Positions 1,931-3,085 are shown, numbered from the stretch's first letter. The stretch is 64,000 bases of DNA from Macrostomum lignano (GCA_002269645.1 NIVC01000208.1:62001-126000), one strand, 5' to 3'. Program-made: numbers and translations. The notes: generated by a model not told the origin, from the letters alone.

Positions 1931-3085
1931 TCAAGGGCATGTGCCAGCGGACCAGCTTGTACCGGGAGAGCACTGCCTCTGAATGTACTTAAAGTTGGAG
2001 CATTGCATATAATGAACATCACTGCTGCAATGCTGCTGGTATTCGCCTTCGATCCCGCAGTATTGATCTGCTGATGCGCACGCAGTGCTGCTTGCTGAAG
2101 CAGTGGTTGAGACTGGAGCAGTGGTTGAGACTGGAGCAGTGGTTGAGGCTGAAGCAGTGCTTGAGGCTGGAGCAGTGGTTAAGACTGGAGCAGTGGTTGA
2201 GGCTGAAGCAGTGCTTGAGGCTGGAGCAGTGGTTGGGGCTGAAGCAGTGGCGGTGATTAAGGCTGGAGCAGTGGTTGAGGCTGGAGCAGTGGTTGAGGCT
2301 GGCGCAGTGGATGAGACGGGAGCAGTGGTTGAGGCTGGAGCAGTGGCGGTGGTTGAGGCTGGAGCAGTTGTTGAGGCTGGAGCAGTGGCAGTGGTTGAGG
2401 CTGGAGCAGTGGCAGTGGTTGAGGCTGGAGCAGTGGCAGTGGTTGAGGCTGGAGCAGTGGCAGTGGTTGAGGCTGGAGCAGTGGCAGTGGTTGAGGCTGG
2501 AGCAGTGGCGGTGCTTGAGGCTGGAGCAGTGGTGGAGACAGAGTCAGTCTCAGCACTTTTTCCCTCAGTAGTGGTGGATAGAAGCCGACCCTCAACGACC
2601 TAAAAAAAGAGCGGCATTGGCTTGAAGCGTATCGAGTTTTATCTTTGTTTAATAGACATTGCTTTATACAAGTTGTTCTAGGAAATTTCAATCCAATAAT
2701 TTTTGCATTCGCTCAGTCTGCAGTTTTGATTGTTATGTTGCCCCATTTGCCTCAAATCACCTAAAAACAATTTTTAATCACAAAGCAAGATAGACCGACT
2801 GACCTCGCTGACGCAGTCCAGGGGTCTCCACAGCGCCTCATACTGAGCGGCAGTGGCCAGATAGCAAGTGCCGTCTCGCTTGAACACGGCGGTGCAGTTG
2901 GGTCGCACTGCGCACTCCACAGAGCAGACGCGAGGGTCTCGAACTCCGTTAACCCGAAACAGGTCGGTCAGGTTTCCGGGGCAACCCGAGACGACGCGGA
3001 AGCGGACGCAGACTCCGGACGCGACGGACAGCAGGCTGAGCAGGCAAGAGGCCACAGACAGCATTCTGTGATGTGGCAGGTGCAT
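1931..3085 (-). CDS. P1a: secreted PAN/Apple - mucin stalk - 5-Cys module protein, about 316 aa; exons 2804-3085 and 1931-2599
   Basis: Signal peptide (..[12 protein letters not shown]). PAN-like Cys pattern [19 protein letters not shown]. Donor GAG/GTCAGT at 2803, acceptor TTTTTAG/GTC at 2600, phase 0. Exon 2 is 669 nt and open: VVEGRLLSTT..(STTATAPA)n..CASADQYCGIEGEYQQHCSSDVHYMQCSNFKYIQRQCSPGTSWSAGTCP*. Start could be the second Met (MLSVA). Confidence 0.85.

What the first reader, a model, noticed from the sequence alone, without database searches (positions are those of the whole stretch)
1931..2080. Hidden C-terminal 5-Cys module (C-x9-C-x8-C-x9-C-x10-CP*) resembling a chitin-binding domain
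Seen: not in the ORF track. The spliced P1 frame ends CGIEGEYQQHCSSDVHYMQCSNFKYIQRQCSPGTSWSAGTCP*, with one more Cys 7 residues upstream, and is kept in P1a, P1b and P1c. Established: CBM14/peritrophin-A domains have a (F/Y)xxC...CPxGxx(W/F)..C core and often alternate with mucin stalks. Inference: a shortened CBM14-like module lacking the last Cys, making P1 a bivalent PAN-stalk-carbohydrate binder or cross-linker. The spacing is not canonical, so it may be a new small disulfide fold.
Basis: partly seen in the sequence, partly recalled or inferred. Interest (0 to 1): 0.7.

Follow-up and report, generated by a model that had tools for sequence, protein, structure and literature searches.

The report
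Truncated chitin-binding-like domain on flatworm mucin
The hidden cysteine-rich tail is real: it is a divergent, shortened relative of the animal and fungal chitin-binding domains (CBM14/CBM19), sitting at the end of a secreted mucin-like protein of the flatworm Macrostomum lignano, which is a fairly ordinary architecture.

Summary
On the minus strand a two-exon gene (3064..2804, 2599..1931) encodes a signal peptide, a PAN/apple-like domain, a Thr/Ser/Ala/Pro stalk and ...CASADQYCGIEGEYQQHCSSDVHYMQCSNFKYIQRQCSPGTSWSAGTCP*. The window is Macrostomum lignano DNA. Annotated paralogues have the same PAN, stalk and module layout, and UniProt names one of them a CBM_19 domain protein.

The module has six cysteines, not five, because the upstream Cys is conserved in the paralogues. 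Several moderate lines place it in the CBM14/CBM19 group:
- Pfam returns only CBM_19 (14.9 bits) and CBM_14 (12.5 bits), both below cut-off.
- An exhaustive profile search of 1.84 billion proteins returns multi-CBM14 proteins of molluscs and a moth.
- The only PDB sequence hit is the CBM14 of an insect chitinase.
- hhalign gives 72-96% probability, far above shuffles.
- A confident AF2 model best matches Der p 23, a CBM14-like domain that also ends one residue after the fifth Cys.

No curated threshold is met, and chitin binding is untested. Identity among the three intact copies reflects recent segmental duplication, not selection. An old, now frameshifted copy is the real evidence for constraint. 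I file it as a new member of a known kind, of low to moderate interest.

The parts
2804..3064 (-). P1a exon 1: signal peptide (about residues 1-17) plus a PAN/apple-like domain with 7 Cys (87 codons)
   Evidence: Translation and GT donor at 2803. 83% identical to M. lignano 'Apple domain-containing protein' A0A1I8GKV4. Pfam PAN_3 and KIAA0319_N hits are sub-threshold. The top 5 Foldseek hits of a low-confidence model are the PAN/apple lectin SML-2.
2600..2803 (-). P1a intron (204 nt, GT...AG, phase 0)
   Evidence: Sequence read. The same intron is present in P1b and P1c.
2081..2599 (-). P1a exon 2, mucin-like stalk: 173 aa of [14 protein letters not shown] repeats (S+T 49%, P 11%, A 29%)
   Evidence: Stalk length varies among copies (173, 81 and 251 aa).
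1934..2080 (-). P1a C-terminal six-Cys module (49 aa), a truncated CBM14/CBM19-like domain
1931..1933 (-). Stop codon TGA, directly after Cys-Pro
   Evidence: Annotated paralogues P0002-P0006 also end in AGTCP.
21923..22183 (-). P1b exon 1 (PAN/apple-like)
21325..21717 (-). P1b exon 2: 81-aa stalk, module (21474..21328, F to Y) and stop. The full protein is 217 aa.
51482..51742 (-). P1c exon 1 (PAN/apple-like)
50375..51277 (-). P1c exon 2: 251-aa stalk, module (50524..50378, identical to P1a) and stop. The full protein is 387 aa.
62326..62451 (-). Old diverged copy of the module (CSKLNSVARDCDSNNHYLYCYLWFYIRWNCTSGTSRDAGTCP*). It is out of frame with its stalk, and its PAN exon (63204..62945) is also frameshifted. 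It is probably a pseudogene or an assembly error.
   Evidence: Nucleotide identity is 49%, pS 0.89 (saturated) and pN 0.42. All five Cys and the HY, YI, GTS and AGTCP motifs are kept.

Best explanation
The module is the C-terminal domain of a secreted, lineage-specific glycoprotein of the flatworm Macrostomum lignano. It is a divergent, C-terminally truncated member of the CBM14/CBM19 (peritrophin-A / ChtBD2-like) group of small disulfide-rich carbohydrate-binding domains.

Shown:
- The gene structure is signal peptide, PAN/apple-like domain, Thr/Ser/Pro/Ala stalk of variable length, then a 49-aa six-Cys module.
- The core (Y-x-x-C, nine residues, C-x-x-G-T-S-W/Y, then C) aligns with the C3-C4-C5 beta-hairpin core of CBM14.
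- The domain stops one residue after C5, as in the mite allergen Der p 23.

Inferred:
- The stalk is O-glycosylated and extended.
- The module folds as a three-stranded sheet stapled by three disulfides. The likely pairs are C1-C3 and C4-C5, as in CBM14, plus the extra N-terminal Cys with the displaced C2, which would replace the missing C2-C6 bond.
- The exposed aromatics (Tyr in HYMQC, Tyr in KYIQ, Trp in GTSW) stack on GlcNAc-type sugar rings. The protein would then tether a glycan polymer (chitin or a related glycan) at one end and a PAN ligand at the other, like a peritrophin or intestinal mucin.

My confidence is about 0.7 for homology to this domain group and about 0.35-0.4 for actual chitin binding.
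For: Pfam:
- Of 24,736 models scanned at E<=10, only CBM_19 (E 0.027, 14.9 bits) and CBM_14 (E 0.16, 12.5 bits) match the module.
- Paralogous modules score 17.8-20.4 bits on CBM_19. One of them passes the 20.1-bit cut-off and UniProt names it a 'CBM_19 domain-containing protein'.

Sequence searches:
- An exhaustive hmmsearch of 1.84 billion representatives gave 10 hits at E<=1e-3.
- The interpretable ones are multi-CBM14 proteins: Patella 'chondroitin proteoglycan-2', Lottia 'chitin-binding type-2', Pectinophora 'mucin-2-like', and an unnamed protein that hits both CBM_14 and CBM_19.
- The only PDB sequence hit is the C-terminal CBM14 of an insect chitinase, 3w4r (E 0.064).

Profile-profile comparison:
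- hhalign gives 95.7% probability (score 40.6) against CBM14 repeats taken from those hits.
- It gives 71.7% (score 25.5, E 3.5e-5) against an independent set of CBM14 domains from solved structures.
- Column shuffles, including ones that keep the Cys columns fixed, reach at most 20 (0 of 600 and 0 of 400).

Structure:
- The AF2 model has pLDDT 85 and three strands.
- The Foldseek top PDB hit is Der p 23 (TM 0.60/0.66, probability 0.89). EHEP, CHIT1, its isolated CBM14 and tachycitin are also in the top 12.
- About a third of the top 50 viral hits are baculovirus or entomopoxvirus ChtBD2 proteins.
- Der p 23 also ends one residue after C5.

Coding status and constraint:
- The old diverged copy has saturated synonymous sites but keeps every Cys and the key motifs.
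- P1a and P1b differ by 3 synonymous changes and 1 conservative change.
Against: - No curated threshold is reached for P1 itself (CBM_19 14.9 against 20.1 bits; CBM_14 12.5 against 22.1).
- No Foldseek match has E<=1e-3, as expected for 54 residues but still not significant.
- The aligned core is only 23-31 residues.
- The C2-C3 spacing is 8 rather than 5, C6 is missing and there is an extra N-terminal Cys.
- The stronger hhalign result uses CBM14 repeats that were themselves selected by the module profile, which is circular.
- The module was not confidently modelled within the full-length protein (pLDDT below 50).
- The AF2 alignment was shallow (6 sequences, 3 effective).
- I found no evidence in the papers searched that M. 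lignano makes chitin.
- Transcription of these exact loci was not checked. Only paralogous UniProt gene models support the splice pattern.
Confidence: 0.65

Rival explanations
1. The module is a new, lineage-specific small disulfide fold unrelated to CBM14/19. The resemblance would be convergent Cys spacing plus a few aromatics, and the module would have a different role, for example covalent multimerisation of the mucin like the C-terminal knots of gel-forming mucins.
For: - All curated scores are sub-threshold.
- The Cys spacing is non-canonical.
- The mature protein has 13 Cys (7 plus 6), so one could be free for intermolecular bonding.
- A word-indexed search of 5.8 billion proteins found no relative of the module alone.
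Against: - With the Cys columns held fixed, shuffles of the CBM14 profiles never approach the real hhalign scores, so the match does not rest on the cysteines alone.
- The unbiased AF2 model retrieves CBM14 structures first.
- Pfam returns no other Cys-rich family (EGF, CTCK, ShK, knottin) even at E<=10.
Confidence: 0.15
2. The module is a genuine CBM14/19-type fold whose ligand is not chitin. Candidates are another glycan, polyphenols or a protein partner. This would resemble the peritrophin-A domains of the Aplysia protein EHEP, which bind phlorotannin, or Der p 23, whose ligand is uncertain.
For: - EHEP (8in3, 8in6; its entries are titled as a polyphenol-binding protein and a tannic-acid complex) is among the top structural and sequence relatives of CBM14 sets.
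- The searches made here found no report of chitin in M. lignano.
- The truncation removes the C-terminal part of the canonical domain.
Against: The aromatic positions typical of chitin-binding CBM14 are kept (Y-x-x-C and G-x-x-W/Y). The closest sequence relatives are named chitin-binding proteins.
Confidence: 0.15
3. The region is not expressed as protein: a decaying or untranscribed member of a rapidly duplicating array.
For: - One copy (62.3-63.2 kb) carries frameshifts.
- The exact P1 proteins are not in the 15-billion-protein collection.
- Identity among the copies equals that of the flanks.
Against: - Three copies keep intact ATG-to-stop frames with canonical splice sites.
- Annotated M. 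lignano paralogues have the same architecture and the same AGTCP-stop end.
- Synonymous sites are saturated while the Cys and motifs are conserved against the old copy.
Confidence: 0.05

Closest known systems
Der p 23 / Der f 23 (house-dust-mite peritrophin-like allergens; PDB 4zce, 5zjl)
   Same: Best structural match to the module model (TM 0.60/0.66). Its CBM14-like domain also ends one residue after the C5-equivalent Cys (...ETCT against ...GTCP). It shares the Y/F-x-x-C, nine-residue, C-x-x-x-T-x-W core. By general knowledge it is also a small secreted protein with a Thr/Pro-rich region before the domain.
   Different: Der p 23 has four Cys: it lacks the C2 equivalent and the extra N-terminal Cys. 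It has no PAN domain. BLASTP identity is only 29% over 21 residues.
CBM14 / peritrophin-A / ChtBD2 domains of peritrophins, insect intestinal mucins, CPG-2-type proteoglycans and the C-termini of GH18 chitinases (for example 3w4r, CHIT1 5hbf/6so0, tachycitin 1dqc)
   Same: The central beta-hairpin core, the aromatic positions and the association with Ser/Thr-rich O-glycosylated linkers are shared. As in insect chitinases, the module sits at the C-terminus after the linker.
   Different: C2-C3 spacing is 8 rather than 5. The C5-C6 tail and C6 are absent, and there is an extra Cys seven positions before C1. The Pfam score of 12.5 bits is below the 22.1 cut-off.
CBM19 (PF03427; by general knowledge the chitin-binding domain at the C-terminus of fungal chitinases such as yeast Cts1, after a Ser/Thr-rich region)
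   Same: It is the best-scoring curated model and covers most of the module (model positions 8-54 of 61). One paralogue passes the cut-off. The layout of a linker followed by a C-terminal binding domain is the same.
   Different: P1 itself scores 14.9 bits against a 20.1 cut-off. The nearest real proteins found are animal CBM14 proteins, not fungal ones. No bona fide CBM19 sequence was available for direct comparison.

Membership tests
CBM14 (Pfam PF01607, peritrophin-A / ChtBD2) | Score at or above the Pfam gathering threshold (22.1 bits) | tested here: not met
   12.5 bits (E 0.16) for the P1 module and 13.9-14.8 bits for paralogues.
CBM14 (Pfam PF01607, peritrophin-A / ChtBD2) | Six Cys with canonical spacing (C2-x5-C3, and C5 followed by a tail ending in C6). 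The consensus is taken from general knowledge and from the alignments A3 and A5. | tested here: not met
   The module is C-x6-C-x9-C-x8-C-x9-C-x10-C-P-stop. C2 is displaced by 3 residues, C6 and the tail are absent, and there is an extra N-terminal Cys.
CBM14 (Pfam PF01607, peritrophin-A / ChtBD2) | Conserved core: aromatic-x-x-C3, about 9 residues, C4-x-x-G-x-x-aromatic, then C5 | tested here: met
   HYMQC, nine residues, CSPGTSW, then SAGTC. The paralogues have CSAGTSY. hhalign gives 95.7% and 71.7%, and shuffles never reach those scores.
CBM14 (Pfam PF01607, peritrophin-A / ChtBD2) | Fold: small beta-hairpin and three-stranded sheet stapled by disulfides | tested here: inconclusive
   The AF2 model has pLDDT 85 and three strands. 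The top PDB match is Der p 23 (TM 0.60/0.66), and five of the top 12 hits are CBM14 structures, but no E-value is at or below 1e-3.
CBM14 (Pfam PF01607, peritrophin-A / ChtBD2) | Binding to chitin | not testable with these tools
   Needs recombinant protein and a chitin pull-down or ITC.
CBM19 (Pfam PF03427) | Score at or above the Pfam gathering threshold (20.1 bits) | tested here: not met
   The P1 module scores 14.9 bits (E 0.027). Paralogues score 17.8-20.4 bits, and only P0004 (A0A1I8H776) passes.
CBM19 (Pfam PF03427) | Direct similarity to bona fide (fungal chitinase) CBM19 domains | not tested
   No authentic CBM19 sequence or structure could be fetched with the tools. There is no CBM19 hit in the PDB sequence searches.
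PAN/apple domain (N-terminal partner domain) | Pfam PAN-family score above threshold, or a confident PAN fold | tested here: inconclusive
   PAN_3 scores 12.4-14.9 bits against a 21.1 cut-off. UniProt names the paralogues 'Apple domain-containing'. The AF2 PAN region has pLDDT 60-78, and the top 5 Foldseek hits are the PAN/apple lectin SML-2 at E about 1.2.
Mucin-type PTS stalk | Tandem repeats rich in Ser/Thr and Pro behind a signal peptide | tested here: met
   S+T is 46-49% and P is 10-12%. [14 protein letters not shown] repeats make stalks of 81-251 aa. O-glycosylation itself cannot be tested here.

The most novel reading that the evidence does not exclude
Platyhelminthes are not known to me to make chitin. 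In this reading, a fast-duplicating tandem family of secreted PAN-mucin proteins has recruited a remodelled CBM14-type domain (C6 tail lost, a new N-terminal Cys re-stapling the displaced C2). The domain would act as a swappable C-terminal 'warhead' that recognises a foreign or partner glycan, for example chitin or other polysaccharides of the diatom prey, or glycans in the mating partner. This would define a distinct Cys-pattern subfamily of the CBM14/19 group with a non-canonical ligand.
Probability: 0.15. Interest if true: 0.5.

Novelty: new member of a known kind. Interest (0 to 1): 0.27.

Why it matters
It gives a lineage-specific, tandemly amplified flatworm gene family a concrete, testable biochemical handle: a likely glycan-binding anchor at the end of a mucin stalk. 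It also adds a second natural example, after Der p 23, of a CBM14-type domain that ends right after C5, here with a compensating N-terminal cysteine. That is useful for defining the minimal fold. It does not open a long-standing question, because mucin stalks joined to peritrophin-type domains are common in invertebrates, and a paralogue is already auto-annotated as CBM_19.

Tried and rejected
- The word-indexed homologue search with the module alone and with the module alignment found nothing.
- phmmer of the single module against PDB sequences found nothing. Only the profile found 3w4r.
- Saposin-repeat proteins (P0007, P0009, P0013) topped the exhaustive search. They match only about 20-residue stretches, summed over 6-10 repeats, and are SapB proteins by Pfam, so I rejected them as spurious. 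P0015 is a low-complexity repeat and was rejected too.
- I looked for genomic DNA of paralogue P0001, to compute dN/dS and see its context. It is not on record.
- The exact P1a and P1b proteins are not in the protein collection.
- AF2 on full-length P1b gave a poor model (pLDDT 44.7), usable only as a weak hint for the PAN fold.
- Literature searches for M. lignano with chitin, chitin synthase, PAN or mucin gave nothing specific to this family.
- I considered conservation among the three copies as evidence of selection and rejected it.
- I considered a further 3' exon supplying C6 and rejected it. The paralogue gene models also stop after AGTCP. The aberrant end of P0001 (LAHPIPLAP...) looks like a frameshift of the same codons.

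Full report
**What is there**

The minus strand of 1931..2080 reads CASADQYCGIEGEYQQHCSSDVHYMQCSNFKYIQRQCSPGTSWSAGTCP followed by TGA. The frame is open for 222 codons back to 2599. There an AG acceptor (2601-2600) ends a 204-nt intron whose GT donor (2803-2802) follows an 87-codon first exon starting at ATG 3064.

The spliced product is 309 aa. It has four parts:
- a hydrophobic signal peptide;
- a Cys-rich domain of about 70 aa;
- a 173-aa stalk of [14 protein letters not shown] repeats (S+T 49%, P 11%);
- the Cys module.

The bacterial-style ORF list misses it because the exon-2 frame has no start codon before the module.

**Origin and family**

Exon 1 is 83% identical to UniRef A0A1I8GKV4, an 'Apple domain-containing protein' of the flatworm Macrostomum lignano, so the window is M. 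lignano DNA. It contains about 15 copies of the PAN-like exon on both strands. They are followed by stalks and by several different C-termini.

Only three genes carry an intact copy of the module:
- 3064..1931 (309 aa);
- 22183..21325 (217 aa, one F-to-Y change);
- 51742..50375 (387 aa, module identical).

A fourth copy at 62451..62326 is only 40% identical in protein and 49% in DNA. It keeps the five Cys in identical spacing, plus HY, YI, GTS and AGTCP-stop. It is out of frame with its stalk, and its PAN exon is frameshifted too.

**Is the conservation meaningful?**

Not among the three intact copies. They sit in segmental duplications of at least 4 kb (93-98.5% identity). The module (97.3-100%) is no more conserved than the intron or the 700 nt downstream (97.1-99.5%). 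The four differences between P1a and P1b are three synonymous changes and one conservative change, which is suggestive but too few to count.

The real evidence for constraint comes from deeper comparisons.
- Against the old copy, synonymous sites are saturated (pS 0.89) while pN is 0.42, and every Cys is kept.
- The UniProt paralogues P0002-P0006 have a short stalk and a module about 50% identical to P1: VCFTDGQ[AD]CTIDFMRDCSSDVHYLRC[ND]HG[AH]YVQMPCSAGTSYSAGTCP.
- These paralogues keep all six Cys, including the upstream one, and end at the same CP-stop.

The unit is therefore a six-Cys, three-disulfide module, not a five-Cys one.

**What the module is**

Five lines of evidence converge. None of them is decisive alone.

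1. Pfam. Of 24,736 models at E<=10, only CBM_19 (14.9 bits, E 0.027, model positions 8-54 of 61) and CBM_14 (12.5 bits, E 0.16) match. By general knowledge Pfam groups these two in one clan. The paralogues score 17.8-20.4 bits on CBM_19. One passes the 20.1-bit cut-off and UniProt already names it 'CBM_19 domain-containing protein'.

2. Exhaustive profile search. An HMMER search of 1.84 billion representatives gave only ten hits at E<=1e-3.
   - The interpretable ones are multi-CBM14 proteins: Patella vulgata 'chondroitin proteoglycan-2', Lottia gigantea 'chitin-binding type-2 domain' protein and Pectinophora 'mucin-2-like'.
   - A fourth, unnamed protein hits both CBM_14 and CBM_19 and contains CEHGRYIQRECAPGTSF, close to the module's CSNFKYIQRQCSPGTSW.
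   - The three saposin-repeat hits are summed short matches and are spurious.

3. PDB sequences. The module profile hits one distinct sequence out of 177,635, the C-terminal CBM14 of an insect chitinase (3w4r, E 0.064).

4. Profile-profile comparison.
   - hhalign gives 95.7% probability (score 40.6) against CBM14 repeats taken from the hits above. That set is biased, because the module profile selected it.
   - It gives 71.7% (score 25.5, E 3.5e-5, 23 columns) against an independent alignment of CBM14 domains from solved structures.
   - Column shuffles, including ones that keep the Cys columns fixed, never exceed about 20. The match therefore does not rest on cysteines alone.

5. Structure.
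   - An AF2 model built only from the Macrostomum sequences is confident (pLDDT 85.1, pTM 0.61) and has three strands.
   - Its best PDB match is Der p 23 (TM 0.60/0.66, probability 0.89). EHEP, human CHIT1, its isolated CBM14 and tachycitin are also in the top 12.
   - In the viral library about a third of the top 50 are baculovirus or entomopoxvirus ChtBD2 proteins.
   - No Foldseek E-value is significant, as expected for 54 residues.

**How it differs from canonical CBM14**

The alignment shows C1, C3, C4 and C5 in register with CBM14. The module's second Cys lies three residues N-terminal of the usual C2, so C2-C3 is x8 rather than x5. The tail from C5 to C6 is absent, and there is an extra Cys seven positions before C1.

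Der p 23 is a precedent for the truncation. Its crystallised domain ends ...ETCT, one residue after the C5 equivalent.

From the known CBM14 pairing (C1-C3, C2-C6, C4-C5; general knowledge) I infer that the extra N-terminal Cys pairs with the displaced C2. I could not check this because the model coordinates are not exposed.

**The rest of the protein**

The N-terminal domain is only weakly assigned to PAN/apple:
- Pfam PAN_3 scores 12.4-14.9 bits against a 21.1 cut-off.
- UniProt uses the name 'Apple domain' for the paralogues.
- A low-confidence AF2 model (PAN region pLDDT 60-78) has the galactose-binding PAN/apple lectin SML-2 of Sarcocystis as its top five Foldseek hits, at E about 1.2.

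Stalk length varies among copies (81, 173 and 251 aa).

**Most likely mechanism**

The protein is secreted and has an extended, O-glycosylated stalk, which is inferred from its composition. The C-terminal module presents Tyr, Tyr and Trp on a small disulfide-stapled sheet to a GlcNAc-type polymer. The PAN-like head offers a second binding site. This is the logic of peritrophins, insect intestinal mucins and the linker-CBM tails of chitinases.

I put homology to the CBM14/19 group at about 0.7. Chitin as the actual ligand is only about 0.35-0.4. The searches here found no report of chitin in M. lignano, and CBM14 folds can bind other ligands (EHEP).

**Rivals**

- A genuinely new fold or a multimerisation knot (0.15).
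- A CBM14-type fold with a non-chitin ligand (0.15).
- Non-expression (0.05).

**Novelty and verdict**

This is a new, divergent member of a known domain group in a familiar mucin-plus-binding-domain architecture. A paralogue is already auto-annotated. The unusual points are the Cys pattern and the PAN partner in a flatworm.

The CBM14-like, truncated reading is right in substance. 'Five-Cys', 'new fold' and 'kept in three copies' need correction, and binding remains untested. Interest is low to moderate.

Noticed in passing
window 1..64000, PAN-like exons at about 3064, 8840, 12474, 18318, 22183, 27959, 31794, 43689, 47159, 51742, 55539, 60158, 63204 (-) and 19318, 44805, 48160 (+): There is a tandem or inverted array of about 15 nearly identical PAN/apple-like first exons (80-99% aa identity). 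They are joined to Thr/Ser/Pro/Ala stalks of very different lengths and to several unrelated C-termini (a Lys/Glu-rich tail ...[24 protein letters not shown] repeats, and the Cys module). The head is far more conserved than the tails, which suggests gene conversion or exon shuffling.
   Followed up: partly
window 4489..6375 (+), and a related copy near 24000..26000: A 628-aa ORF has retrotransposon pol features (RNase H and integrase-like sequence) in a GC-rich (56%) block. A second GC-rich block with matching sequence lies about 19 kb downstream, as part of the segmental duplication.
   Followed up: no
window about 16700..18010 (-): A very long tetranucleotide microsatellite (it reads SIYLSIYL... 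in all three frames; GC 30%, strong GC skew) lies immediately after the PAN exon that ends at 18058. It probably disrupts that gene copy or fills its intron.
   Followed up: no
window 62200..63240 (-): This old paralogue of P1 has frameshifts in both the PAN exon and at the stalk-module junction. More TTAPAS-type repeat follows its stop codon. It is either a pseudogene or a misassembled repeat.
   Followed up: partly
window 1..87 (+), 19480..19570 (+), 48384 region (+): Plus-strand PAN-like exons read straight on into ...AAQYEYFVDNKNVRNSHYSSII-stop instead of splicing after ...LDCVSE. This is a truncated variant of the family, arranged tail-to-tail with (convergent to) the P1 genes.
   Followed up: no
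window about 9900..10300 and 57300..57900 (-): Open frames of about 211 aa consist of PTDTS/PPDTS pentapeptide repeats downstream of the PAN genes at 12474 and 60158. They may be another repeat-protein exon or just a translated minisatellite.
   Followed up: no
UniProt A0A1I8GKV4 (P0001), not in the window: Its C-terminus ...GTSYSLAHPIPLAPVHEDAHH replaces ...GTSYSAGTCP of its cluster mates. It looks like a one-base frameshift of the same codons, so this database entry probably carries a sequencing or model error, or is a broken allele.
   Followed up: partly
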